DNA from: Octopus bimaculoides
Taxonomy: Eukaryota
Direction: 5' to 3'
NCBI RefSeq assembly: GCF_001194135.2
Contig: NC_068988.1
Location: 17,083,758-17,147,757 of the forward strand
Length of the DNA: 64,000 nucleotides
The notes below the pieces were generated by a model. It did no database searches and had not been told where the DNA came from. It saw only the letters and a list, made by a program, of their open reading frames with translations. Positions 353-60,373 of this stretch are shown here, one piece after another. The translations under genes and the position numbers were made by a program. Each line of letters opens with the position of its first letter. Position 1 is the stretch's first letter.

Positions 353-653
353 TATGTGTGTGATTTGTTGGCGGAAATGCTTTAGTTGTGCAGGACTGGT
401 GAGCCATGAGAGAACTATCATGAATAAACACATTTTAAATTGTGGTTTGGTTATCCTTCGCAATAGAACATGTGCAGCCTGTGGAAAGGTGTGCCTTTCA
501 GCTGGAGAACGGGAAAAGCATGTCAAAATATTCATACTGTTCCTTCTTTTCTTTCTACCAGCGAGCACAGCAATCCACTATGCAACATAGTGGGCAGATA
601 TTTCAGTGATTCTTTCTAGCAATTGCTTTACTCGAATACGGGAAAGCAGCTAC
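353..653 (+). mobile_element. RTE-clade LINE 3' end with two degenerate C2H2-like zinc-finger motifs and 3' UTR
   Basis: Plus strand encodes CVICWRKCFSCAGLVSHERT and CAACGKVCLSAGEREKHVK, the CxxC-x3-C-x-S-x2-G-L-x-S-H-x-R type motif that ends RTE ORF2. It is followed by TA-rich repeats. Confidence 0.75.
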
Positions 654-812
654 TATATGTACGCACGTATATATATATATATATATATNNNNNNNNNNNN
701 NNNNNNNNNNNNNNNNNNNNNNNNNNNNNNNNNNNNNNNNNNNNNNNNNNNNNNNNNNNNNNNNNNNNNNNNNNNNNNNNNNNNNNNNNNNNNNNNNNNN
801 NNNNNTATATAT

Positions 813-1192
813 GTGGAGGCGCAATGGCCCAGTGGTTAGGGCAGTGGACTCGCGGTCATAGGATCGCGGTTTCGATTCCCAGACTGGGCTTTGTGAGTGT
901 TTATTGAGCGAAGACACCAAACGTTCCACGATGCTCTGGGATGGGTATGGTGGTGAACCCTGCTGTACTCTTTCACCACAACTTTCTCTCACTCTTCCTT
1001 CCTGTTTCTGTTGTGCCTGTATTTCAAAGGGCCAGCCTTGTCACACTGTGTCACGCTGAATATCCCCGAGAACTACGTTAAGGGTACACGTGTCTGTGGA
1101 GTGCTCAGCCACTTGCACGTTAATTTCACGAGCAGGCTGTTCCGTTGATCGGATCAACTGGAACCCTCGACGTGGTAAGTGACGGAGTTCCA
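813..1192 (+). mobile_element. tRNA-derived SINE, family A (~380 bp), full length
   Basis: A-box-like TGGCCCAGTGG and B-box-like GTTTCGATTCC. Body nearly identical to the copies at 22040 and 59994. Confidence 0.92.
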
Positions 1193-1739
1193 GTACAGAG
1201 TACGTATATATAAATATATGTATGTATATATATGTGTATGTATTTATGTCTGGGAAGCAAACACTTTTTGCGGTGATCATTAAACCAATAACCTCTTATT
1301 TTTTTTGTCTTTGTAATATCAATGTCATGAAATTAACCTTTTAAGGTATAACACTCGCACGCTTAAAACTAAGGAAACTTTCACAGGGACAGCTAGGCGA
1401 AACGCTAGATTTCACAATATTTTAAATGTCAATTTAGGGTCAGTGCTAAATTTTTTTGACTCTTTTAATTATTTACTATCACAAATAAAATAACATTACC
1501 TCTCCTATTAATCGAAATTGGTGACTTACTAACTCAGTATTCAGAAATATAAAAAGTCTTTATCAAGTACAAAACAAAAGAAAAGCAAAAAAATCACTCT
1601 TTTTTGTAAACGAGAAACAACTGTTCGCATTTTAATTTGTGTTCAATGCCTTTACAGTACGAGTTGATAATCTGAAACCGAACTGTACAGTAGCTTGCAT
1701 GGACGACATTGCTGTTAAGTTTTTATACTATTACAGACA

Positions 1740-2967: not shown

Positions 2968-3684
2968 NNNNNNNNNNNNNNNNNNNNNNNNNNNNNNNNN
3001 NNNNNNNNNNNNNNNNNNNNNNNNNNNNNNNNNNNNNNNNNNNNNNNNNNNNNNNNNNNNNNNNNNNNNNNNNNNNNNNNNNNNNNNNNNNNNNNNNNNN
3101 NNNNNNNNNNNNNNNNNNNNNNNNNNNNNNNNNNNNNNNNNNNNNNNNNNNNNNNNNNNNNNNNNNNNNNNNNNNNNNNNNNNNNNNNNNNNNNNNNNNN
3201 NNNNNNNNNNNNNNNNNNNNNNNNNNNNNNNNNNNNNNNNNNNNNNNNNNNNNNNNNNNNNNNNNNNNNNNNNNNNNNNNNNNNNNNNNNNNNNNNNNNN
3301 NNNNNNNNNNNNNNNNNNNNNNNNNNNNNNNNNNNNNNNNNNNNNNNNNNNNNNNNNNNNNNNNNNNNNNNNNNNNNNNNNNNNNNNNNNNNNNNNNNNN
3401 NNNNNNNNNNNNNNNNNNNNNNNNNNNNNNNNNNNNNNNNNNNNNNNNNNNNNNNNNNNNNNNNNNNNNNNNNNNNNNNNNNNNNNNNNNNNNNNNNNNN
3501 NNNNNNNNNNNNNNNNNNNNNNNNNNNNNNNNNNNNNNNNNNNNNNNNNNNNNNNNNNNNNNNNNNNNNNNNNNNNNNNNNNNNNNNNNNNNNNNNNNNN
3601 NNNNNNNNNNNNNNNNNNNNNNNNNNNNNNNNNNNNNNNNNNNNNNNNNNNNNNNNNNNNNNNNNNNNNNNNNNNNNNNNNNNN

Positions 3685-3715
<31 letters not shown>

Positions 3716-4342
3716 TGTCTATGTGTGTGTGTGTCTTTGTGTGCGCGTGCGTGTGTGTATATATGCGTATTTGTATCTGTGTTTGTCCCGATAGAGTAAG
3801 AAGTAGTCTTTCAAAGAAAAGTCTTGGGATCGATCGTTTCCTAAATTATACAGAGATATTTGTAATTTTCCTGCTCACTGACCATTCACTTTTAATGTGT
3901 CTTCTCCATTTTAATAATGTGTCACTGCCTATGCAACAGTGATTTTGAAGACATTTTAATGGTTTCTACTTATAATTTGTAATGTTTGCCTTCTTACGAC
4001 ACACCGGAATACTTGAGTTTTTTTATCATTTTAGACGAGATATGGATACTTCTAAGAGCATAATACTGCACAACGGAGAGTTAAACTCACTTTGTGCTTT
4101 CTACAAGCGATGCTAGTATATAATACGTGTTCTGGAAAAAAAATTCTGTTGACATACTTTCTACAAAGATCATGAGCTTCATTTATATGGTCTGTTCTGT
4201 CAGATTTGGCAACTTGTGTAAATTCAAAATATCAGACGTGCATTTCAGTTTATAGGCAGTTTCATTCTGATAATTTATTACTGTTGGATTAATTACTTCA
4301 GTTCTTCCCTCGCTCTTTATCTTATTGGTGCTTTATTTCACC

Positions 4343-5023
4343 TGTTATTGTTGTTGTTGTTGCCATTGTTGTTACTCGGATTGTTGATATTGTTGCCGCC
4401 GTCTGTGGAGTAACCGTATGTGTGTTTGAGCGTTTATATGGATTCGCTTCCTATGTTGTTTGTATCCGTGCCCGTTATACAAATCTTTTGTTTTTTCTGT
4501 CTCATTTTTTTTATAGTTATCATTGATATGTGGATCTATGTACATTATATGTGCATTATGTTGTTTGTATCTGGGTTTATTTTAGGCTCGTTCTATCTAT
4601 TACTGTATCTGTAGCTTCTGTGATCTGTCTGGGGGTTTTGTCAGTTCTTTGACGTGTTAGACGCTTAGATAAATCACAGAGGCTACAGACATAGCTATAG
4701 ACAGCTCGAGCCTCAATAGAAAACACGAATGGAACAAAAACACCCAACACCACACGACACAACATGACAACTAATGTCTGAAGGGAGAAAAAAAAACACA
4801 GATACAAACATTATAATACACGTACAATAAACATATATGCACGTACTTATTATGAATATAAAAACAAAATTAGAGACATTAAAAAACAAATGATATCGGC
4901 ACGGATATAAACAACATAAGAAGCGAACATATAAACACACACAAAGACACCTACGGTAAATCCACAGAAGGCCGCAACAATAACAACAATACGGCTCACA
5001 TGAATGGTAACAACAGTAACAAC
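4343..5023. repeat. Long imperfect inverted repeat (fold-back), arms ~4343-4643 and ~4650-5023
   Basis: The reverse complement of 4673-5023 aligns to 4343-4624, e.g. TCTGTAGCTTCTGTGAT (4608-4624) with ATCACAGAGGCTACAGA (4673-4689). The right arm carries a ~74-nt insertion at 4714-4787. Confidence 0.9.
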
Positions 5024-5342
5024 TACTACTACCCCCATGATGGCAGCAGCGTGGACGAACACACAAACACGGTGAGTTACTAGAACGGTACAAAAAGTCG
5101 GGTTCAAGGGCAGCAGCAGCGGGGTTGGGGACGGCGCTGAGGGGAGGGTCATAGTGCTACTAAGAACAATGACACACACATAATCACACACAGACAATCA
5201 CAGTCGCATGTGCGTATTAGGATACACATCGTTGAAGAACAGAATACATTAAGTAGAACAAGAGCACACGCGAAGACGCAAAGTGTCACTAGCAAAAAAA
5301 AAAAAAAAATCATCACGAAATACAACATTGTGTGTGTGTGTG

Positions 5343-5502
5343 CGTGGAGACGATTGACTTAGTAGTTAGGGTTTTGGACTCATGATCGTTATATCGTGAA
5401 TTCGATTCTTGGGCGGGGCCACGCGTTGTTTTCTTGAGTGAAACACTTCATTTCTCGTTGCTTCAGTCCGCTCAAGTGGCAAAATTGAGTAATCCTGCAA
5501 CA
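5343..5502 (+). mobile_element. tRNA-derived SINE, family D (CORE-like), 5' part truncated by gap
   Basis: tRNA-like head (TTAGTAGTTAGGG...TTCGATTC) followed by TTTTCTTGAGTGAAACACTT, resembling the CORE motif TGTCCTTGAGCAAGACACTT. Confidence 0.7.
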
Positions 5503-13512: not shown

Positions 13513-13688
13513 NNNNNNNNNNNNNNNNNNNNNNNNNNNNNNNNNNNNNNNNNNNNNNNNNNNNNNNNNNNNNNNNNNNNNNNNNNNNNNNNNNNNNNNN
13601 NNNNNNNNNNNNNNNNNNNNNNNNNNNNNNNNNNNNNNNNNNNNNNNNNNNNNNATATATAAGAGTGTATAAAATATTTTTATACATA

Positions 13689-18369: not shown

Positions 18370-18520
<151 letters not shown>

Positions 18521-18577
18521 ATATAAAATTAGTATGAACAGCAGTTTGCAATATTTCCCCAAATGGGAGAATTGCAA

Positions 18578-19081
18578 ATGTCACTAAATGCGACTAGGCT
18601 GTTAAATAATGCCTACATTACTAGAAACAAGAGCTAAAATGCTCTAATGCTGTAGCTAACACACTAGAGCATTTGTGTATTTTAGTCCTTATTTCTAGCA
18701 ATGTAGGCATTGCTTAATACCCTAGTAGCACTTAGTGACATTTTAATTTTTTCTTTTTGGTGAAATCTTGCAAAATGCTGTTCATATCGTTTTATATATA
18801 CACATTAGCAAAAAGGATCCAATTATTTGGATGACAAAAACATGAATATAGATGGCAGAGCGAGTCCAGAAAAAGCCGAGAGCGAGGCGGCTTAACTGAC
18901 GAGGTGACCGAAATTGCCGAAATTGACGCCTCAGTATTAAGTATTTTCGATCGGGACTTTTGGATAATTATCGTCCTGTTAGTGTATGCTTTCATCTATG
19001 TGCGTTAACTACAGCATTAAAGCGTTTTAGCTCTTATTTCTAGCAATATAGTTGTTTTCAAACACCCTAGTCGCATTTAGT
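18578..19081. mobile_element. Non-autonomous DNA transposon (MITE-like) with three related arms
   Basis: ACTAAATGCGACTAGG...TAATGCTGTAGCTAACACACTAGA (18583-18667) is an inverted match to 18995-19081, and also to 18665-18742. Confidence 0.75.
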
Positions 19082-19376
19082 ATATATATATATATATATA
19101 TATATATATNNNNNNNNNNNNNNNNNNNNNNNNNNNNNNNNNNNNNNNNNNNNNNNNNNNNNNNNNNNNNNNNNNNNNNNNNNNNNNNNNNNNNNNNNNN
19201 NNNNNNNNNNNNNNNNNNNNNNNNNNNNNNNNNNNNNNNNNNNNNNNNNNNNNNNNNNNNNNNNNNNNNNNNNNNNNNNNNNNNNNNNNNNNNNNNNNNN
19301 NNNNNNNNNNNNNNNNNNNNNNNNNNNNNNNNNNNNNNNNNNNNNNNNNNNNNNNNNNNNNNNNNNNNNNNNNNNN

Positions 19377-20973: not shown

Positions 20974-21337
20974 AGTATCTACAAGATGAACTTGAAAAAA
21001 AAAATGAGTTTTAGGTAGAAGTGAACGATATTGAAAAGGGCCATTGCTATCTTCGTTGCTACATATATAAGAAATATATCACGGTAGTTTCTGTTTACAG
21101 ACATGAAATACGTCTTAATATGAAGCGAACGGTGATTTATTTACTAATATATTTGCAGATTGCAATCCACATAAGAAATTTAGAGAAATTCCATCGTTTT
21201 AATCCTCATAGTATTTATTGTCTTATATCTTATTTTTATGTGTTCTATTTGTAATACTAGCCTCACCTTTCTGTTACATCCTGCAATGTTGCTTAGTACT
21301 TTTTCTGACAATGTTTTATTACCATATTCACACATAT

Positions 21338-21370
<33 letters not shown>

Positions 21371-22039
21371 NNNNNNNNNNNNNNNNNNNNNNNNNNNNNN
21401 NNNNNNNNNNNNNNNNNNNNNNNNNNNNNNNNNNNNNNNNNNNNNNNNNNNNNNNNNNNNNNNNNNNNNNNNNNNNNNNNNNNNNNNNNNNNNNNNNNNN
21501 NNNNNNNNNNNNNNNNNNNNNNNNNNNNNNNNNNNNNNNNNNNNNNNNNNNNNNNNNNNNNNNNNNNNNNNNNNNNNNNNNNNNNNNNNNNNNNNNNNNN
21601 NNNNNNNNNNNNNNNNNNNNNNNNNNNNNNNNNNNNNNNNNNNNNNNNNNNNNNNNNNNNNNNNNNNNNNNNNNNNNNNNNNNNNNNNNNNNNNNNNNNN
21701 NNNNNNNNNNNNNNNNNNNNNNNNNNNNNNNNNNNNNNNNNNNNNNNNNNNNNNNNNNNNNNNNNNNNNNNNNNNNNNNNNNNNNNNNNNNNNNNNNNNN
21801 NNNNNNNNNNNNNNNNNNNNNNNNNNNNNNNNNNNNNNNNNNNNNNNNNNNNNNNNNNNNNNNNNNNNNNNNNNNNNNNNNNNNNNNNNNNNNNNNNNNN
21901 NNNNNNNNNNNNNNNNNNNNNNNNNNNNNNNNNNNNNNNNNNNNNNNNNNNNNNNNNNNNNNNNNNNNNNNNNNNNNNNNNNNNNNNNNNNNNNNNNNNN
22001 NNNNNNNNNNNNNNNNNNNNNNNNNNNNNNNNNNNNNNN

Positions 22040-22358
22040 CCCAGACCGGGCGTTGTGAGTGTTTATTGAGCGAAAACACCTAAAGCTCCACGAGACTCCG
22101 GCAGGGGATAGTGGCGAATCCTGCTGTACTCTTTCACCACAACTTTCTCTCACTCTTACTTCCTGTTTCTGTTGTGCCTGTAATTCAAAGGGTCAGCCTT
22201 GTCACACTGTCTCACGCTGAATATCCCCGAGAACTACGTTAAGGGTACACGTGTCTGTGGAGTGCTCAGCTACTTGCACGTTAATTTCACGAGCAGGCTG
22301 TTCCGTTGATCGGATCAACTGGAACCCTCGACGTCGTAAGTGACGGAGTGCCAACAAC
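22040..22358 (+). mobile_element. SINE family A, 5' end lost in gap
   Basis: Near-identical to 880-1192 and 60060-60373. Ends CCAACAAC. Confidence 0.92.
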
Positions 22359-22662
22359 ATATGTATATATGTTTCTGTATCTATATAATTGCTCATATGT
22401 GGCTGACTTTGCCCCTATCAATTTCTCTAACTCTCTCTTTCTTCTAAATTTTCAAAGTAATTGTGAAGAAATGAAATATACCGTACTTCATCAACCAGTG
22501 CCTTCCCTTACGATGGATGATTTTTCAGTGAAAATTCTGCATTGTTTTCTGTTAACTATCATTGGTACTACTAATGTCGAGACTATTGGAAACGCTTCTA
22601 ATTTCAATAATTATGGCGAAAGAGGAAGAATGGTGTTGTTTAGAGAATATACGAGGAAGAAA

Positions 22663-28040: not shown

Positions 28041-28591
28041 NNNNNNNNNNNNNNNNNNNNNNNNNNNNNNNNNNNNNNNNNNNNNNNNNNNNNNNNNNNN
28101 NNNNNNNNNNNNNNNNNNNNNNNNNNNNNNNNNNNNNNNNNNNNNNNNNNNNNNNNNNNNNNNNNNNNNNNNNNNNNNNNNNNNNNNNNNNNNNNNNNNN
28201 NNNNNNNNNNNNNNNNNNNNNNNNNNNNNNNNNNNNNNNNNNNNNNNNNNNNNNNNNNNNNNNNNNNNNNNNNNNNNNNNNNNNNNNNNNNNNNNNNNNN
28301 NNNNNNNNNNNNNNNNNNNNNNNNNNNNNNNNNNNNNNNNNNNNNNNNNNNNNNNNNNNNNNNNNNNNNNNNNNNNNNNNNNNNNCAGAAGCGAAGCGTA
28401 ATCGTGCGTATAGGGAATTTACAACATAAATGCAGCTGGCTTCATATTATTGCAAACAATTTAATCCATTCCGCCATGAATGCTACGACGGATCAGTTAA
28501 TGTCGTCATATAGCTTTATATGAAAATATAAGTAATAGTTATAGATATGCATTATATAAATGTATTATACATGAATATATATATATATATG
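27724..28591. other. Identical 206-bp direct duplication on both sides of an N-gap (27724-27929 = 28386-28591)
   Basis: CAGAAGCGAAGCGTAATCG...CATGAATATATATATATATATG is repeated base for base. Probably an unmerged contig overlap. Confidence 0.85.
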
Positions 28592-33939: not shown

Positions 33940-35137
33940 AATATTAAAAATATGCAATTAGAATGGGCGGAATATAAAATCAGTGTAGAATGTTATAAAT
34001 CCATATGGAAGGTTATGAAACCTTATGGTCCGACTACCGTTTCTGGGGGCATATTGGCCCAAAGATATAAAAGTGGCCAGACAGTTGAACATATAAATCC
34101 CTATATAGCACCCGAATCGGATCTGGACAATAATCCTACCACAGCTATTAGGAACTCTTCTAGGTTAAGTAATTCTAAAATGATGACAGTCTCCCGCAAT
34201 CCTGATTACCAGATAATGTGTACTAGTTCCAGCATAACCATTTATTCCAATTCTGTTATAAACTCCGACGTAGACCAACCCTTACGACGACATGTCAACA
34301 CCAAGTAACCTCAAGAGGACCATACTCTAACTACCTAACAAACAAACAAAAAACAGTAAATATCGAACATTCTATTTATGGGTTCTTGAAGGTTTTTGCT
34401 TACACAAAAATGTGATATATAAATACATTGTGAGGACACCCAGCTACCACCAGGCAATTATATATATTGGGACTACAGTAAACTTTAAGCCTAGATATCG
34501 TGCACGTATTAATTCGTTTGTTAATCCAAACACCAAATATTCTACTTCACAAGCTACACATATCCATAATCGTAAAGCACAAGCTAACTATACAGTACAA
34601 ACTATCCTGGTCACTAGTAACAGAAGATTCCCCTTACAATTCATTTACACGTAAATGTAAACCCTGTATTAAAGGAGCATTAACTATTCTGCGTATGTAT
34701 AATTCTTGAATGTTAAATAAGTTTTCACATGTTATCTTCTATTTATTATGAATTGCAATAGCTTGTATGATATCTTCTCCTCTAATCCTCCACCTCTAAT
34801 ATTATTAATAGCTAAGTCTTAACATTAATATGTCCTCCATTCCTACTACTCTCTAGAAAACATCCCCAGCACCTACACCAAGCCTAATAATAAGTGTAGC
34901 GCTTTATAAGGTCTGTCAACTTTGAATTCCACCACATCAGCATAACAAATGTAAACTTATCAGTGGAAAACTTCCCTGAAGAAGGAGGTGGTAGTATGAA
35001 TTAATGGACCTTAAAATCTATTATATCTTCGGACCACAATGCCCCCAGAAACGACCGTCGAACCTTCCATATGGATTTATAACATTCTACACTAATTTTA
35101 TACTTCACCAATTCTATTTCTATATTCTTAATATCGT
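33940..35137 (+). mobile_element. Penelope-like element remnant: GIY-YIG endonuclease region plus pLTR-like 3' end, bounded by inverted repeats
   Basis: 34412-34700 encodes VIYKYIV...IYIGTTVNFKPRYRARINSF-NP...YSTSQA and then KLSW...PYNSFTRKCKPC, the PLE GIY-YIG and C-terminal Cys pattern. 33940-34072 is an inverted copy of 35022-35137. Confidence 0.85.
34965..35068 (+). ncRNA. Degenerate minimal type I hammerhead ribozyme-like motif in the PLE pLTR
   Basis: CTGAAGA (34976-34982), then stem II, GAAAC (35048-35052), a 4-nt loop and GTC (35057-35059). Partial stem I GGAA..TTC / GAACCTTCC. Confidence 0.5.
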
Positions 35138-35585: not shown

Positions 35586-36514
35586 NNNNNNNNNNNNNNN
35601 NNNNNNNNNNNNNNNNNNNNNNNNNNNNNNNNNNNNNNNNNNNNNNNNNNNNNNNNNNNNNNNNNNNNNNNNNNNNNNNNNNNNNNNNNNNNNNNNNNNN
35701 NNNNNNNNNNNNNNNNNNNNNNNNNNNNNNNNNNNNNNNNNNNNNNNNNNNNNNNNNNNNNNNNNNNNNNNNNNNNNNNNNNNNNNNNNNNNNNNNNNNN
35801 NNNNNNNNNNNNNNNNNNNNNNNNNNNNNNNNNNNNNNNNATATATATATATATATAACACGTTCATATGATTCAAAAAGGAAACACATAGGCAACTTAA
35901 GGCACACTAAATACACATATTCAGTTATTTTCGAGTACACAAATAGATACATACGAGAGAGTGATGAAAAGGCACTAGCTTAGGACAAAAGAAACTACAC
36001 AGCTACCAATTAATTGTGATTTTATTCAGCATATTCCTCTCGCAGATTCAAACTCTTATTCGGCAGCCCTTCATGTTTTCTACACCCAGTAAAAGAACAC
36101 GGAAGGTTGGGCCTCCAACTAGGCCTTTCGCGACACCCTTAAATCCAAAAGCGTTTTAGCACCCCCTCGTATATAGATAGAATTACTAATTTAAGGACTA
36201 CGTCGTTTGCGTGTCGATTCCAAACAATTCAGTATGCAGGTTATTGCACCTACCCCGTTGTCATATGCTAAATTTGGGCAAATATCCGGGAAAGTTATCT
36301 GAAATATAATTTCTCTTACATGAAATAAGAGGTATTTCTTGACATCAGTGACATAGGTGTTTAGTCACTGGGCAGAACTAAATTAACCTCTCAATTTCTG
36401 ACACATATACTCACATGCACAAACACACATATATACAGAAGCATACACACACACACGCACACAAACATATATGTATAGGGCGTGCCCAATGTCAGGCACC
36501 AAAGAATTTGACAT

Positions 36515-39202: not shown

Positions 39203-39249
39203 TGTACACACACACACACACACGCACACACACACACACACACACGCAC

Positions 39250-39331
<82 letters not shown>

Positions 39332-47850: not shown

Positions 47851-47923
47851 TGTGCCATTCCATAAATAATGCAGTTTTACTATACATTTATGTTTGAAAA
47901 TTACGATAAGAAAATACGTTTTT

Positions 47924-48256
47924 ATCTAAAATATACTCTCCTTCATTTTCTACAATGTTCTTACATTTATCTGGTACAATATCAAGGACATTCTTCCAAA
48001 ATGCACTTGTGCGTGACGAAAAATACTCCCCCAGAAAAGTTCTGATCTCATCTAGAGAATTCAGATTTGTTCCGTCCGAATGATTCTGAAGACTGTGGAA
48101 TAAATGATAATCAGATGGGGCGATGTTTGGCGAATATTTTAGGTGGGGCATAGTTTTCCATTCAAACTGCTCCAGCCTTTGGAATGTCATCCTCACTGTA
48201 TGGGACTGAGTATGGGGTTTCGTACTGAAACTAAAGACGATCATTTTCCTACTAGC
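47924..48256 (-). pseudogene. Mariner transposase C-terminal remnant
   Basis: Encodes HLKYSPNIAPSDYHLFHSLQNH...EGEYILD, matching the mariner YSPDLAPxDYHLF motif and C-terminus. 5' end interrupted by (TA)n. Confidence 0.92.
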
Positions 48257-48274
48257 GCTGACTTGAATGATTGG

Positions 48275-48318
<44 letters not shown>

Positions 48319-49019
48319 TGTATATATTGTATATAAAGCTACGTGAAACTGTGTTAATTGTATTTGAAAACAAAAATGCAGCGAGAACTTAGTACTGCGA
48401 GCATTAAAATCATCTCTTCAGTTTTCCTGAGAGAACACCGAGAAGGAATTCTATAGAAATTCAGTTTGTATTTGAAATACATATAGACGAGTCTATAAAC
48501 GAGACATAGTTTAACCTTCACGTTTTGGTACCTTTCTTCATCTATAAAATGAAGTAACAGGGTATTACTCAAATTGTTTTGAAAGAGGTATTTCCGGGAT
48601 TAAATGTAGTTTTTTCTGAATCGGTATACATGACAATAGGCACGGATAGGGTTCTAAGAATGCAATGAAAGGGCAGATATGATATTATTCTCTAAGAATA
48701 CTATTGTTTTGTGAATTATGATCTGTGTAGGATAAAGATAATGCTTTTGTCTTCGATTGATGACATAGCTTCAGATAGGTCTTATCTTTTTCATAGGGAA
48801 ACTTTGTTTAAAGGATCTATTTTGAACCGCAATAGGGTATATATTTGAGCCTTAGATTGTTATTTCTACTGTGGTATTGCCAGAAGAAATCGTTGTCGCC
48901 AAATAAACATAGTAAATATTCTATGACATTAGTGAAGTTTTTCTTCTGGTTGTTGTCGTAACTGGTTGAGGTTTCTTCTGTGCGGGTTATAGTGGATGAC
49001 GACTCTATCATCTTGGCGA

Positions 49020-55167: not shown

Positions 55168-56601
55168 NNNNNNNNNNNNNNNNNNNNNNNNNNNNNNNNN
55201 NNNNNNNNNNNNNNNNNNNNNNNNNNNNNNNNNNNNNNNNNNNNNNNNNNNNNNNNNNNNNNNNNNNNNNNNNNNNNNNNNNNNNNNNNNNNNNNNNNNN
55301 NNNNNNNNNNNNNNNNNNNNNNNNNNNNNNNNNNNNNNNNNNNNNNNNNNNNNNNNNNNNNNNNNNNNNNNNNNNNNNNNNNNNNNNNNNNNNNNNNNNN
55401 NNNNNNNNNNNNNNNNNNNNNNNNNNNNNNNNNNNNNNNNNNNNNNNNNNNNNNNNNNNNNNNNNNNNNNNNNNNNNNNNNNNNNNNNNNNNNNNNNNNN
55501 NNNNNNNNNNNNNNNNNNNNNNNNNNNNNNNNNNNNNNNNNNNNNNNNNNNNNNNNNNNNNNNNNNNNNNNNNNNNNNNNNNNNNNNNNNNNNNNNNNNN
55601 NNNNNNNNNNNNNNNNNNNNNNNNNNNNNNNNNNNNNNNNNNNNNNNNNNNNNNNNNNNNNNNNNNNNNNNNNNNNNNNNNNNNNNNNNNNNNNNNNNNN
55701 NNNNNNNNNNNNNNNNNNNNNNNNNNNNNNNNNNNNNNNNNNNNNNNNNNNNNNNNNNNNNNNNNNNNNNNNNNNNNNNNNNNNNNNNNNNNNNNNNNNN
55801 NNNNNNNNNNNNNNNNNNNNNNNNNNNNNNNNNNNNNNNNNGAGAGAGAGAGAGAGAGAGAGAGGTATTGGTATAGAGAGACGGAGAAAGAGAGAAAGCA
55901 AGAGAAATACCACAAGCTTAATTGCATTAAGCTCTATAGAACATTTCAGTACGAATTGAATTCTTATTACGACCGTATACTGAAGAATAACTACGCTATA
56001 TTTTCTGTATAACATGGATATTAAAGAATCAAATTAATCACAAGATTCCTGATTGGGTGACTTCATCTGATAGACAGATATTACTTGGAAAATCCAGTTA
56101 TAGAAACGGAGAATGCAAACTGTCTAAGTAGTAACTTAATTAATGAGTATCCCAGAATTTACTATCTTTTTAAATGAAATCTAGCAAATAAGAAAAAACT
56201 GACAGCATTTTATGTGTATTACTTAAGTATCAAACCAAAACTGATAGATTCATAAATCGTAGGTTAAACCTTATAGAAAATTTTGAATATGTGTTCTATC
56301 TGCATCATTGCAATTTTCAAATCTATCCTTGGCATGTGAAATACCTACTGGAGAATTTCAGGAGTAGATGCGTTCTTTATTTTCAGCTAAATTATTGCTC
56401 CATCCTTGGGATGAAGGTAGAGAAAATGACTGCAGCCAAACTGAAGAAATACTGTCGTGGACAGAAAAGAAAAGAAAATTTGAAACAATTATAGCAATTA
56501 TAAAATTATCAAAGTGACACGTATTAATCATGATAAACATAGATGAATTGTCCGATTTCATTAAAATAGACAGTTACATATGGGACACTTTGAAATACTC
56601 G

Positions 56602-58941: not shown

Positions 58942-59116
58942 AAGTACGTATGCTTTCATCTGGAAAGCACACGAATATATACATATATATATATATATTC
59001 GTATGCTTTCCAGATGAAAGCGTATGTGTGAATATGTATATATATATATATATATATATNNNNNNNNNNAAGTACGTATGCTTTCATCTGGAAAGCACAC
59101 GAATATATACATATAT
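58942..59116. repeat. Three copies (+,-,+) of a ~35-bp unit containing the dyad GCTTTC-N5-GAAAGC
   Basis: Copies at 58942, 58995 (inverted) and 59070, separated by TA runs and a 10-N gap. Confidence 0.85.
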
Positions 59117-59993
59117 GTGTGTGCATGTATATATATTCTAAATGTTTTTTGTGATTTATGAAACTCAAAATAATTTTTATGAAAATTGAATCATTAGATA
59201 TAAATATTAATATTTTAACGAAAATTATTCATGAAATCGATAAAAATATAAATCAATAAATTTCAGTGCATAAAATTATAGGAGAATACGATAAAAGAAG
59301 ACTAATCGAGAACATTGAGTGCACAAACCAATGGAACGAACTGGGTTTGAAATAATGGAGATTAAACTAATCCATAAAAGACTTAATGTTCCCATTAGAT
59401 AAAGGTTATAACTTGTGACTACCACCTAATGAGGAGAAGTAAAAGAGGAAACGATTACATAGAAGTATTAGACCGGTTTTGTCAAAACTGCGTTTAACCA
59501 CAAACAATTCTTCGAATATGTGAAAATATGCTAATCGTCAAGCTACATTATATAAAATAACTTAAGCTGTTCCAAAGAATACATGTGAGCAAACGAAAAT
59601 GTTTAGAATAAATTCCGGCAGTAAATATAAATTAAATCCGGAACAATTCTAGATATTTAGATTATTATTCTCTTATATAAAATATACAACACAATCAACG
59701 TTGCACAACTGAAATAAAATACATAAATACATGTGTGAATATATATTAGCTGTAGAAATAATTGGAATTTATGCCCTTCAAGTCTATGAACGCCATATAT
59801 AGCTATGTAAAATAACATAGGGATCACATTGAGGTAAAAATATCCTAAAGCCGTCATGTCGTGGTAGGATACGCTTGATATATATTTACAAGATCCAATT
59901 TAAACGTTGAGGACTTTATCTAAGTGTGGCGTAGGCATTAAATGGAACAGAAATGGTATTTATGACAGTTCTCTTGATAGTATTCATTCATGA

Positions 59994-60373
59994 GTGGAGG
60001 CGCAATGGCCCAGTGCTTAGAGCAGCGGACTCGCCGTCATAGGATCGCGATTTCGATTCCCTGACCGGGCGTTGTGAGTGTTTATTGAGTGAAAACACCT
60101 AAATCTCCACGAAGCTCCGGCAGGGGATGGTGGCGAACCCTGCTGCACTCTTTCACCACAACTTTCTCTCACTCTCACTTCCTGTTTATGTTGTGCCTGT
60201 AATTCAAAGGGCTAGCCTTGTCAAACAATGTGTCACGCTGAATATTTCCGAGAACTACGTTAAGGGTACACGTGTCTGTGGAGTGCTCAGCCACTTGCAC
60301 GTTAATTTCACGAGCAAGCTGCTCTGTTGATCGGATCAACTGGAACCCTCGACGTCGTAAGCGACGGAGTGCC
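59994..60373 (+). mobile_element. SINE family A, full length
   Basis: Same head and body as 813-1192. Ends in (CA)n. Confidence 0.92.

What the first reader, a model, noticed from the sequence alone, without database searches (positions are those of the whole stretch)
4343..5023. ~680-nt fold-back of non-repeat-looking sequence: candidate long hairpin RNA (endo-siRNA, miRNA or ADAR substrate)
Seen: a G/T-rich left arm (4343-4643) pairs with an A/C-rich right arm (4650-5023), with a 6-nt apex loop (GTCA-GTTCTT-TGAC) and a ~74-nt right-arm bulge. The apical stem is best preserved: 4608-4624/4673-4689 gives 16 Watson-Crick pairs plus 1 U-G, and most mismatches in the next stretch are G-U wobbles on the + strand. 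Outer arms are diverged with many A-C mismatches. The ends fade into (GTT)/(AAC) repeats with no TIR or TSD, so it does not look like a MITE. The 3' arm contains AATCACAG (4672-4679), whose nt 2-8 equal the miR-2-family seed AUCACAG; this may be chance. Known: coleoids have extensive ADAR editing, which favours A-C mismatches, and many lineage-specific miRNAs. Inference: an old inverted duplication possibly maintained as structured RNA.
Basis: partly seen in the sequence, partly recalled or inferred. Interest (0 to 1): 0.72.

Follow-up and report, generated by a model that had tools for sequence, protein, structure and literature searches.

The report
Old decaying inverted duplication, not RNA gene
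The ~680-base fold-back is real, but it looks like an old, neutrally decaying inverted duplication of GT-rich junk DNA in a repeat-rich region where such fold-backs are common, with no sign that it is kept as a microRNA, siRNA hairpin or other structured RNA.

Summary
The fold-back at 4348-5022 is real. Three collinear inverted-repeat blocks pair a GT-rich left arm with an AC-rich right arm around a 6-nt loop, and the right arm has 75 extra bases. RNA folding gives z = -17 on both strands. Nothing suggests the pairing is maintained:
- The arms are 72.5% identical, with 41 transitions and 41 transversions (K2P 0.35).
- G·U-compatible mismatches do not significantly favour either strand (25 vs 16, p=0.21).
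- The "well-preserved" 17-bp apical stem is no longer than the longest run expected by chance.
- The apical + strand stability advantage arises in 8% of neutral simulations.
- The miR-2 seed heptamer is at chance frequency in the window (6 seen, 8.9 expected) and lies on both strands.
- Rfam finds no family.

There is no TSD, no second copy in the window, no detectable exon nearby, and at least three other complex inverted repeats in the same 64 kb. Published work reports octopus genomes as exceptionally rich in dsRNA-forming loci and lophotrochozoans as apparently lacking an endo-siRNA pathway. Best reading: an ordinary old palindromic duplication, at most a promiscuous ADAR substrate if transcribed. 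Copy number, transcription and orthology could not be tested.

The parts
4348..4643 (.). Left arm of the fold-back: GT-rich (48.5% T, 22% G), starting in a (GTT)n tract at about 4345-4364
   Evidence: collinear inverted-repeat blocks pairing with 4650-5022
4644..4649 (.). Apex loop GTTCTT, closed by the 4-bp inverted microhomology GTCA (4640-4643) / TGAC (4650-4653); symmetry axis at 4646/4647
4650..4716 (.). Apical part of the right arm (AC-rich), pairing with 4581-4643
   Evidence: (I3: 50-nt arms, 78%)
4717..4791 (.). 75 nt present only in the right arm (the 'bulge'). It has the same strand-biased composition as the arms and GTGTTTT at both junctions (GT orientation), so it was probably part of the original ~375-nt unit and was deleted from the left arm
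   Evidence: T 51%, G 24% in GT orientation; no significant similarity to any arm segment, p 0.2-0.9
4792..5022 (.). Outer part of the right arm (AC-rich), ending in an (AAC)n/(TAC)n-like tract at about 5005-5031; pairs with 4348-4583
4608..4624 (+). 5' half of the best-paired 17-bp stem (16 WC + 1 U-G with 4673-4689); its length is as expected by chance at this divergence
4673..4689 (+). 3' half of the 17-bp stem; contains ATCACAG (4673-4679), the miR-2-type seed heptamer, whose reverse-strand twin lies at 4618-4624
   Evidence: (6 occurrences in the window against 8.9 expected)

Best explanation
This is an old, single-event inverted duplication: a palindromic fold-back of a ~375-bp stretch of GT-rich, microsatellite-bordered non-coding DNA.

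Most likely origin (inferred): a DNA 3' end folded back on a very short inverted microhomology (GTCA/TGAC), or a replication template switch occurred there, and the adjacent sequence was copied in reverse. This left a nearly spacerless palindrome whose outer limit lies in a (GTT)n tract.

Since then (shown): the two arms have diverged like neutral DNA to K2P ~0.35. One arm lost ~75 bp and a few small indels accumulated.

The locus can still fold into a long, heavily interrupted duplex on either strand. If it lies in a transcribed region it would be a promiscuous, non-specific ADAR target like very many other inverted repeats in this kind of genome. Nothing indicates it is a dedicated RNA gene (miRNA or hpRNA) or that selection maintains its pairing.
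For: Arrangement:
- Collinear inverted arms with a 6-nt loop and a 4-bp central inverted microhomology.
- Fold-back priming and template switching at short inverted repeats is an established route to palindromic duplications (PMC7999016; PMC10766183 listed).
- Single copy in the window by blastn (word 7) and by an nhmmer profile of both arms.
- No TSD: the flanks share no k-mer of 4 nt or more, while the null mode is 4.

Neutral decay:
- 72.5% identity, 41 transitions and 41 transversions, K2P 0.35.
- G-U-compatible mismatches 25 (+ strand) vs 16 (- strand), p=0.21.
- Full-length folding is equal on both strands (z -16.9 and -17.7).
- Longest paired runs (12 WC; 21/20/17 with G-U) are as expected by chance.
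- The apical strand asymmetry of 15.9 kcal/mol appears in 7.7% of neutral simulations.

No RNA-gene or coding signal:
- No Rfam family at gathering score; only generic-hairpin miRNA hits far below threshold (28 bits against gathering scores of 95-144).
- The seed heptamer is at chance frequency.
- No Pfam domain in the arm ORFs or in 18 other ORFs across the window.

High base rate:
- The same 64 kb holds other complex inverted repeats: 18533-18786 with an 8-nt spacer, 18583-18668/18995-19081, and 33941-34073/35018-35134, plus palindromic compound microsatellites.
- The octopus genome is reported as exceptionally rich in dsRNA-forming loci (PMC5625713).
Against: - Genome-wide copy number could not be measured, so a dispersed family cannot be excluded.
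- Transcription, small RNAs and editing could not be examined.
- No orthologous sequence was available, so neutrality is inferred from the arm-to-arm spectrum alone.
- The apical hairpin is more stable on the + strand (-50.8 vs -34.9 kcal/mol), with one-sided p about 0.05 in simulation. This is a weak hint of + strand preference.
- Both outer ends are (AAC)n-type tracts in the AC-rich orientation, which would also fit a tailed retroposon.
Confidence: 0.72

Rival explanations
1. It is an old, degraded copy of a Foldback-type or MITE-like DNA transposon. Such an element is essentially two long terminal inverted repeats with little or no middle, and the genome would hold many other copies.
For: - The whole element is an inverted repeat with almost no spacer.
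- The outer ends are simple (GTT)n repeats that become more complex inward, loosely like the subrepeat-built arms of Drosophila FB elements (own knowledge).
- A 15-nt exact direct repeat sits 105 nt apart in the left arm, echoed at a 103-nt offset in the right arm.
- Another fold-back in the window (18533-18786) does have a third arm copy nearby, so TE-derived fold-backs exist here.
Against: - No TSD.
- No second copy in 58 kb of non-gap sequence by sensitive searches.
- No tandem subrepeat array beyond the microsatellite ends.
- No hits for the arm ORF in the protein collection, though this is weak because that collection evidently does not index this genome's non-genic ORFs.
Confidence: 0.15
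2. It consists of two retroposon copies (SINE-like, with (AAC)n 3' tails) lying head to head. They arose either by two independent insertions or by one insertion whose cDNA snapped back and copied itself.
For: - Read in the AC-rich orientation from the centre outward, both arms end in (AAC)n-like tracts, as tailed retroposons do.
- The region is rich in SINE-like repeats; for example 5341-5446 matches 813-917 and 59991-60094.
Against: - No tRNA-like head (ARAGORN finds none) and no Rfam hit.
- No similarity to the SINE-like families present in the window.
- No TSDs around either arm, and only 6 nt between the two 'heads', which leaves no room for the target-site duplications of two independent insertions.
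- The snap-back variant is untested speculation.
Confidence: 0.06
3. It is a functional hairpin RNA locus. Either the apical ~100 nt is a lineage-specific miRNA precursor (possibly with a miR-2-like seed), or the whole fold-back is an hpRNA processed into endo-siRNAs.
For: - The apical + strand hairpin is very stable (-50.8 kcal/mol for 102 nt, z -10) with a 17-bp near-perfect stem.
- It is favoured over the - strand by 15.9 kcal/mol.
- AAUCACAG lies on the 3' arm near the loop.
- Coleoids have many lineage-specific miRNAs (PMC9699675).
Against: - The seed is at chance frequency and on both strands.
- No mir-2 hit even at E<=10.
- The hairpin is merely the tip of a 680-nt palindrome whose best stem is no longer than chance predicts.
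- The strand asymmetry is not significant.
- Arm identity of 72.5% (best 40-nt window 85%) is far below the 'highly complementary' repeats of Drosophila hpRNAs (PMC10292708).
- No target-like homologue in the window.
- Endo-siRNAs and siRNA-class Argonaute are reported absent in annelids, with the same factor configuration in cephalopods (PMC8915122).
Confidence: 0.04
4. It is an assembly artefact: a chimeric or palindromic misjoin within a short contig of a gapped draft assembly.
For: The fold-back lies in an 1818-bp contig (3685-5502) between two N runs in a very fragmented region.
Against: - Artefactual palindromes have near-identical arms, whereas these are 72.5% identical with indels.
- More than 480 bp of non-repetitive flank lies on each side within the same contig.
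- A 4-bp overlap could not seed a misjoin in a k-mer assembler (inference).
Confidence: 0.02

Closest known systems
Palindromic (fold-back) inverted duplications formed by fold-back priming or replication template switching at short inverted repeats
   Same: Two collinear arms in inverted orientation, a near-zero spacer with a short inverted microhomology at the centre, no TSD, and a local single-copy event. The mechanism is described in PMC7999016.
   Different: The described cases are mostly large, recent, near-perfect palindromes in yeast or tumour genomes. This one is small (~0.7 kb), germline-fixed and old (K2P 0.35). The central microhomology is only 4 bp, and in arms this diverged that is weak evidence on its own.
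Inverted-repeat dsRNA substrates of promiscuous ADAR hyper-editing (such as inverted Alu pairs, or the palindromic Harbinger repeat of Xenopus)
   Same: A reverse-oriented similar sequence lies within 2 kb at >=65% identity, which meets the loose structural criterion of Porath et al. (PMC5625713). It is predicted to form a long duplex on either strand.
   Different: It fails the strict criterion (>95% over >=40 bp; the best window here is 85%). It is not a recognisable dispersed repeat. Transcription and editing are unknown.
Drosophila hpRNA loci (endo-siRNA hairpins such as Nmy/Tmy or hp-CG4068)
   Same: A long inverted repeat of several hundred nt with a short loop.
   Different: hpRNAs have highly complementary arms that match a target gene and need Dcr-2/AGO2 (PMC10292708). 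Here the arms are 72.5% identical, no target homologue was seen, and the lineage is reported to lack the siRNA branch (PMC8915122).
Foldback (FB) transposons and MITEs
   Same: The element consists almost entirely of inverted repeats, is small, and has simple-repeat outer ends.
   Different: No TSD, no defined termini, no second copy in the window, and no tandem subrepeat architecture.
mir-2 family microRNA precursors
   Same: The heptamer AUCACAG lies on the 3' arm of a stable hairpin.
   Different: No covariance-model match. The heptamer is at chance frequency and also present on the opposite strand. The stem continues for ~300 bp instead of ending in single-stranded flanks. No mir-71/mir-2 cluster context was detected by Rfam in the window.

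Membership tests
Fold-back / palindromic inverted duplication | Two collinear copies of one sequence in inverted orientation, adjacent or nearly so | tested here: met
   three collinear blocks, 298 aligned nt, 6-nt spacer
Fold-back / palindromic inverted duplication | Short inverted microhomology at the symmetry centre (the priming or template-switch site) | tested here: inconclusive
   GTCA/TGAC closes the loop, but 4 consecutive matches are not unlikely in arms that are 72% identical
Fold-back / palindromic inverted duplication | Local event: no TSD and no dispersed copies | tested here: inconclusive
   No TSD and no other copy in the window; genome-wide copy number is not testable with these tools
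Animal miRNA precursor (mir-2 family) | Match to the family covariance model / sequence beyond the seed | tested here: not met
   No mir-2 hit at E<=10. Only unrelated miRNA models matched, at 19-29 bits against gathering scores of 85-144
Animal miRNA precursor (mir-2 family) | Seed occurrence above chance and strand-specific | tested here: not met
   ATCACAG occurs 6 times in the window against 8.9 expected, and on both strands of the hairpin
Animal miRNA precursor (mir-2 family) | Hairpin of ~60-80 nt (about 35 bp) flanked by single-stranded segments | tested here: not met
   Pairing continues for ~300 bp below the apical stem on the 5' side; only the 3' side has a 75-nt unpaired segment
Animal miRNA precursor (mir-2 family) | Discrete ~22-nt 5p/3p reads with 2-nt 3' overhangs; conservation in related species | not testable with these tools
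   No small-RNA data or cephalopod genomes are reachable. The held supplements of PMC9699675 contain no miRNA sequences (the positive control failed)
hpRNA / endo-siRNA locus | Long, highly complementary inverted repeat | tested here: not met
   72.5% arm identity; best 40-nt window 85%; longest WC run 12 bp
hpRNA / endo-siRNA locus | Arms homologous to a target gene | tested here: inconclusive
   No homologue in the window and no protein-level relatives of the arm ORF; the rest of the genome was not searchable
hpRNA / endo-siRNA locus | A Dicer-2/AGO2-type siRNA pathway present in the lineage; 21-22-nt phased reads | not testable with these tools
   Literature only: PMC8915122 reports an apparent loss in annelids and a similar factor configuration in cephalopods
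ADAR hyper-editing substrate | Reverse-oriented similar sequence within +/-2 kb (>=65% identity) | tested here: met
   (76% over 243 nt; 68.6% over 700 nt); criterion taken from PMC5625713
ADAR hyper-editing substrate | Long, nearly perfect duplex (>95% over >=40 bp) | tested here: not met
   The best 40-column window is 85% identical
ADAR hyper-editing substrate | Transcribed, with clustered A-to-G RNA-DNA differences | not testable with these tools
   No RNA-seq access; no exon or domain detected in the window
MITE / Foldback transposon | Target-site duplication flanking defined termini | tested here: not met
   no shared k-mer of 4 nt or more in the 20-nt flanks at three candidate boundaries
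MITE / Foldback transposon | Multiple dispersed copies | tested here: inconclusive
   None in the window. Exact-pattern scans of the metagenome, prokaryote-genome and viral collections found nothing, but those collections are not expected to hold this genome
MITE / Foldback transposon | Arms built of tandem subrepeats (FB type) | tested here: not met
   Only the terminal (GTT)n, one 21-nt x2 repeat and one 15-nt repeat at a 105-nt offset

The most novel reading that the evidence does not exclude
The apical + strand hairpin (about 4598-4699) is a young, lineage-specific small-RNA precursor born from an ageing palindrome. That would show a miRNA or siRNA-like locus emerging from a decaying inverted duplication in a clade reported to lack a dedicated endo-siRNA pathway. 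The only support is the marginal + strand stability bias (one-sided p about 0.05) and the stable 17-bp stem.
Probability: 0.04. Interest if true: 0.55.

Novelty: new member of a known kind. Interest (0 to 1): 0.12.

Why it matters
It matters little as it stands. It is one more diverged inverted duplication in a genome type already known to be unusually rich in dsRNA-forming inverted repeats. Its main use is as a negative example. A very strong folding z-score, a near-perfect 17-bp stem and a known miRNA seed all follow from an old palindrome plus chance. A strand-symmetry test, the substitution spectrum, a longest-run expectation and a seed-frequency control are enough to show this without expression data. 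If small-RNA or editing data later showed specific processing, the locus would illustrate how regulatory hairpins arise from decaying palindromes.

Tried and rejected
- **Rfam** at gathering score (whole window) and at E<=10 (4200-5200): only generic-hairpin hits to unrelated miRNA models.
- **Exact-ORF look-ups** of four arm or apex ORFs and one transposase-like ORF in the public assembly index: none on record. The index evidently does not cover this genome's non-genic ORFs, so these negatives say nothing about copy number or transcription.
- **Protein-database search** with the 126-aa arm ORF as a proxy for related copies: 0 hits.
- **Exact-pattern scans** with the block best conserved between the arms, against the metagenome, prokaryotic-genome and viral collections: 0 hits. 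This was expected, because those collections should not contain the organism.
- **Taxon check** with the transposase-like ORF: two weak unnamed hits, so the octopod assignment stays unverified.
- **Candidate mature sequences in the supplements of the octopus miRNA paper**: no hits. The positive control with canonical miR-2 also failed, so this negative is void.
- **Pfam** on 20 ORFs, including the arm ORFs: nothing. The arm ORFs are by-products of A-poor composition.
- **The 75-nt bulge as a tandem duplicate** of a neighbouring arm segment: rejected (p 0.2-0.9).
- **An ADAR signature in the DNA**: rejected as a concept, because editing does not change the genome, and the mismatch spectrum shows no A/G excess.
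- **The one allowed representative-protein HMMER job**: not run, because the low-complexity ORF and the evident absence of this genome from the collection made a useful answer very unlikely.

Full report
**1.

The window is a gapped, AT-rich (about 33% GC) draft eukaryotic sequence with 16 N runs. Between two gaps lies an 1818-bp contig (3685-5502), and the fold-back sits inside it.

- The repeat finder reports three collinear inverted-repeat blocks: 4348-4472/4898-5022 (125 nt, 80%), 4486-4583/4789-4886 (98 nt, 71%) and 4581-4630/4667-4716 (50 nt, 78%).
- The apex is GTCA-GTTCTT-TGAC (4640-4653).
- The stem 4608-4624/4673-4689 has 16 Watson-Crick pairs plus one U-G. The stretch above it pairs largely through G-U on the + strand.
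- The right arm has 75 extra bases (4717-4791).
- The left arm is 48.5% T and 22% G. The right arm is 48% A and 21% C.
- As RNA, 4300-5100 folds at -306 kcal/mol against -180 +/- 7.5 for dinucleotide shuffles (z -16.9). The reverse strand folds at -301 against -184 (z -17.7).

The structure is real and far beyond chance, but it is equally strong on both strands.

**2. The pairing does not look maintained**

A global alignment of the left arm with the reverse complement of the right arm gives 298 aligned positions at 72.5% identity, with 41 transitions and 41 transversions (K2P 0.35).

- *Strand bias.* If the + strand RNA structure were selected, mismatches should be biased to the two transition types that give G-U on that strand. 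The counts are 25 (+ strand) against 16 (- strand), p = 0.21. For the apical part they are 9 vs 4 (p = 0.27), and for the outer part 16 vs 12 (p = 0.57). Half of all mismatches are transversions that break pairing on either strand.
- *Stem length.* The apical region is not better conserved than the outer arms (68% against 74%). The longest Watson-Crick run is 12 bp, and the longest runs with G-U allowed are 21, 20 and 17. About 14 and 19 are expected by chance for 298 positions at 72.5% and 81% pairing. That expectation is my own calculation from the standard longest-run formula, not a tool result.
- *Apical stability.* The apical 102 nt are more stable on the + strand (-50.8 vs -34.9 kcal/mol). 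I simulated perfect palindromes mutated neutrally to the observed divergence. A strand difference that large arose in 7.7% of runs, or 4.8% one-sided. This is a weak hint, not evidence.

**3. miRNA reading**

- ATCACAG occurs 6 times in the window against 8.9 +/- 3 expected. It lies on both strands of the hairpin (4673-4679 on +, 4618-4624 on -).
- Rfam has no hit at gathering score anywhere in the window.
- At E<=10 only three unrelated miRNA models match, at 19-29 bits against thresholds of 85-144. Their alignments show shared hairpin shape and no shared sequence. mir-2 is not among them.
- The hairpin is simply the tip of a 680-nt palindrome.
- I could not check octopus miRNA catalogues. 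The held supplements of PMC9699675 contain no miRNA sequences, because the positive control with canonical miR-2 also returned nothing.

**4. hpRNA / endo-siRNA reading**

- Drosophila hpRNAs are highly complementary inverted repeats that match target genes and are processed by Dcr-2/AGO2 (PMC10292708).
- Here the best 40-nt window is only 85% identical.
- No target-like homologue exists in the window, and the arm ORF has no protein relatives.
- PMC8915122 found no endo-siRNAs or siRNA-class Argonaute in an annelid. It states that the same configuration of RNAi factors occurs in gastropods and cephalopods.
- This prior depends on the sequence being from a cephalopod. That is consistent with its composition and repeat content, but I could not verify it.

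**5. ADAR reading**

- Editing leaves no mark in genomic DNA, so the mismatch spectrum cannot speak to it.
- By the criteria of Porath et al. (PMC5625713) the locus passes the loose test (reverse-oriented similarity of >=65% within 2 kb). It fails the strict one (>95% over >=40 bp).
- That paper reports octopus as exceptionally rich in dsRNA-forming loci, with over a million hyper-editing sites in one CNS data set. Being an ADAR substrate would therefore be the default fate of any transcribed inverted repeat, not a distinction.
- No exon or protein domain was found in 20 ORFs across the window, so there is no evidence that the locus is transcribed.

**6. What it most likely is**

- The two arms abut around a 6-nt loop closed by a 4-bp inverted microhomology.
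- There is no TSD. The flanks share no k-mer of 4 nt or more, while the null mode is 4.
- There is no other copy of the arm in the window, by blastn with word size 7 or by an nhmmer profile of both arms.
- Homology ends on both sides in a (GTT)n/(AAC)n tract.
- The 75 extra bases share the arms' strand-biased composition, resemble no other arm segment, and are bounded by GTGTTTT on both sides. They were probably part of the original ~375-nt unit and were lost from the left arm by a microhomology-mediated deletion (inference).

This anatomy fits a single fold-back priming or template-switch event that produced a near-spacerless palindrome (mechanism reviewed in PMC7999016), followed by long neutral decay.

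The main rivals are an old Foldback/MITE-type transposon copy and a head-to-head retroposon pair, since both outer ends are (AAC)n-like in the AC-rich orientation. I cannot exclude them without the whole genome. Both would make the locus equally ordinary. An assembly artefact is very unlikely, because the arms differ at 27% of positions and by indels.

**7. Base rate**

The same 64 kb contains several other fold-back structures:

- a second complex fold-back with an 8-nt spacer (18533-18655/18664-18786, 80%), with a third arm copy at 18995-19081;
- another inverted pair at 33941-34073/35018-35134;
- palindromic compound microsatellites, (AC)n(AT)n(GT)n, at 18373-18484 and 39206-39325.

Long fold-backs are thus frequent here, which lowers the prior that any one of them is a gene.

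**8. Limits**

None of the reachable collections appears to hold this genome's non-genic DNA. Genome-wide copy number, orthologues, transcription, small RNAs and editing all remain untested. The verdict rests on internal evidence (strand symmetry, substitution spectrum, run lengths, seed frequency, boundaries, local base rate) and on published priors.

**Verdict**

Of the interpretation, only 'old inverted duplication' is supported. This is an ordinary feature of low interest.

Noticed in passing
window 18533-18786 and 18995-19081: A second complex-sequence fold-back (123-nt arms, 80% complementary, 8-nt spacer), unrelated in sequence to the finding. A third arm-like copy (74-83% identical) lies ~330 bp downstream, just before a gap. 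It looks like a small multi-copy, TE-derived hairpin element.
   Followed up: partly
window 18373-18484 and 39206-39325: Palindromic compound microsatellites of the form (AC)n(AT)n(GT)n with a zero-length spacer (53-60-nt arms, up to 94% complementary). The AT core may be flanked by mirror-image transition-derived CA and TG tracts, or these may be small palindromic duplications.
   Followed up: no
N runs, e.g. 2968-3684, 13513-13654, 19110-19376, 28041-28385, 35586-35840, 55168-55841: Many of the assembly gaps are flanked on one or both sides by (TA)n tracts (visible as IYIYIY...XXXX...IYIYIY in ORF translations and in the raw sequence at 3685 and 19080-19109). These gaps are probably unresolved AT microsatellites.
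   Followed up: partly
window 813-917, 5341-5446, 59991-60094; also 603-992(-), 21293-22153(-), 60020-60211(-); 1044-1295(-), 22205-22414(-), 60178-60372(-): A dispersed SINE-like repeat family with at least three or four copies in the window. It is recognisable by recurring pseudo-ORF strings such as MRESCGERVQQ... and RRGFQLIRSTEQPAREINVQVAEHSTDTC. One fragment lies ~320 bp downstream of the fold-back. ARAGORN and Rfam do not recognise a tRNA-like head.
   Followed up: partly
window 33941-34073 / 35018-35134: An inverted pair of another repeat (133 nt, 75% identical, 944-nt spacer). Similar pseudo-ORFs (…YKISVECYKSIWKV…) appear on opposite strands. This is another potential dsRNA-forming pair.
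   Followed up: no
window 47891-48388 (-): A 166-aa open frame that looks by eye like the C-terminal part of a mariner/Tc1-type transposase (…YSPNIAPSDYHLFHSLQNH…). Pfam gave no hit, and the big protein search gave only two weak unnamed ENA hits (31-36% identity). The identification is unconfirmed.
   Followed up: partly
window 58981-59027 / 59074-59120: A 47-nt inverted repeat (89% complementary) straddling the 10-N gap at 59060-59069. It may be a small palindrome that broke the assembly.
   Followed up: no
window 4452-4466 and 4557-4571: An exact 15-nt direct repeat, TATGTTGTTTGTATC, 105 nt apart within the left arm, echoed at a 103-nt offset in the right arm (12/15). This predates the inverted duplication. 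A 15/15 match was reached in none of 100 composition shuffles.
   Followed up: partly
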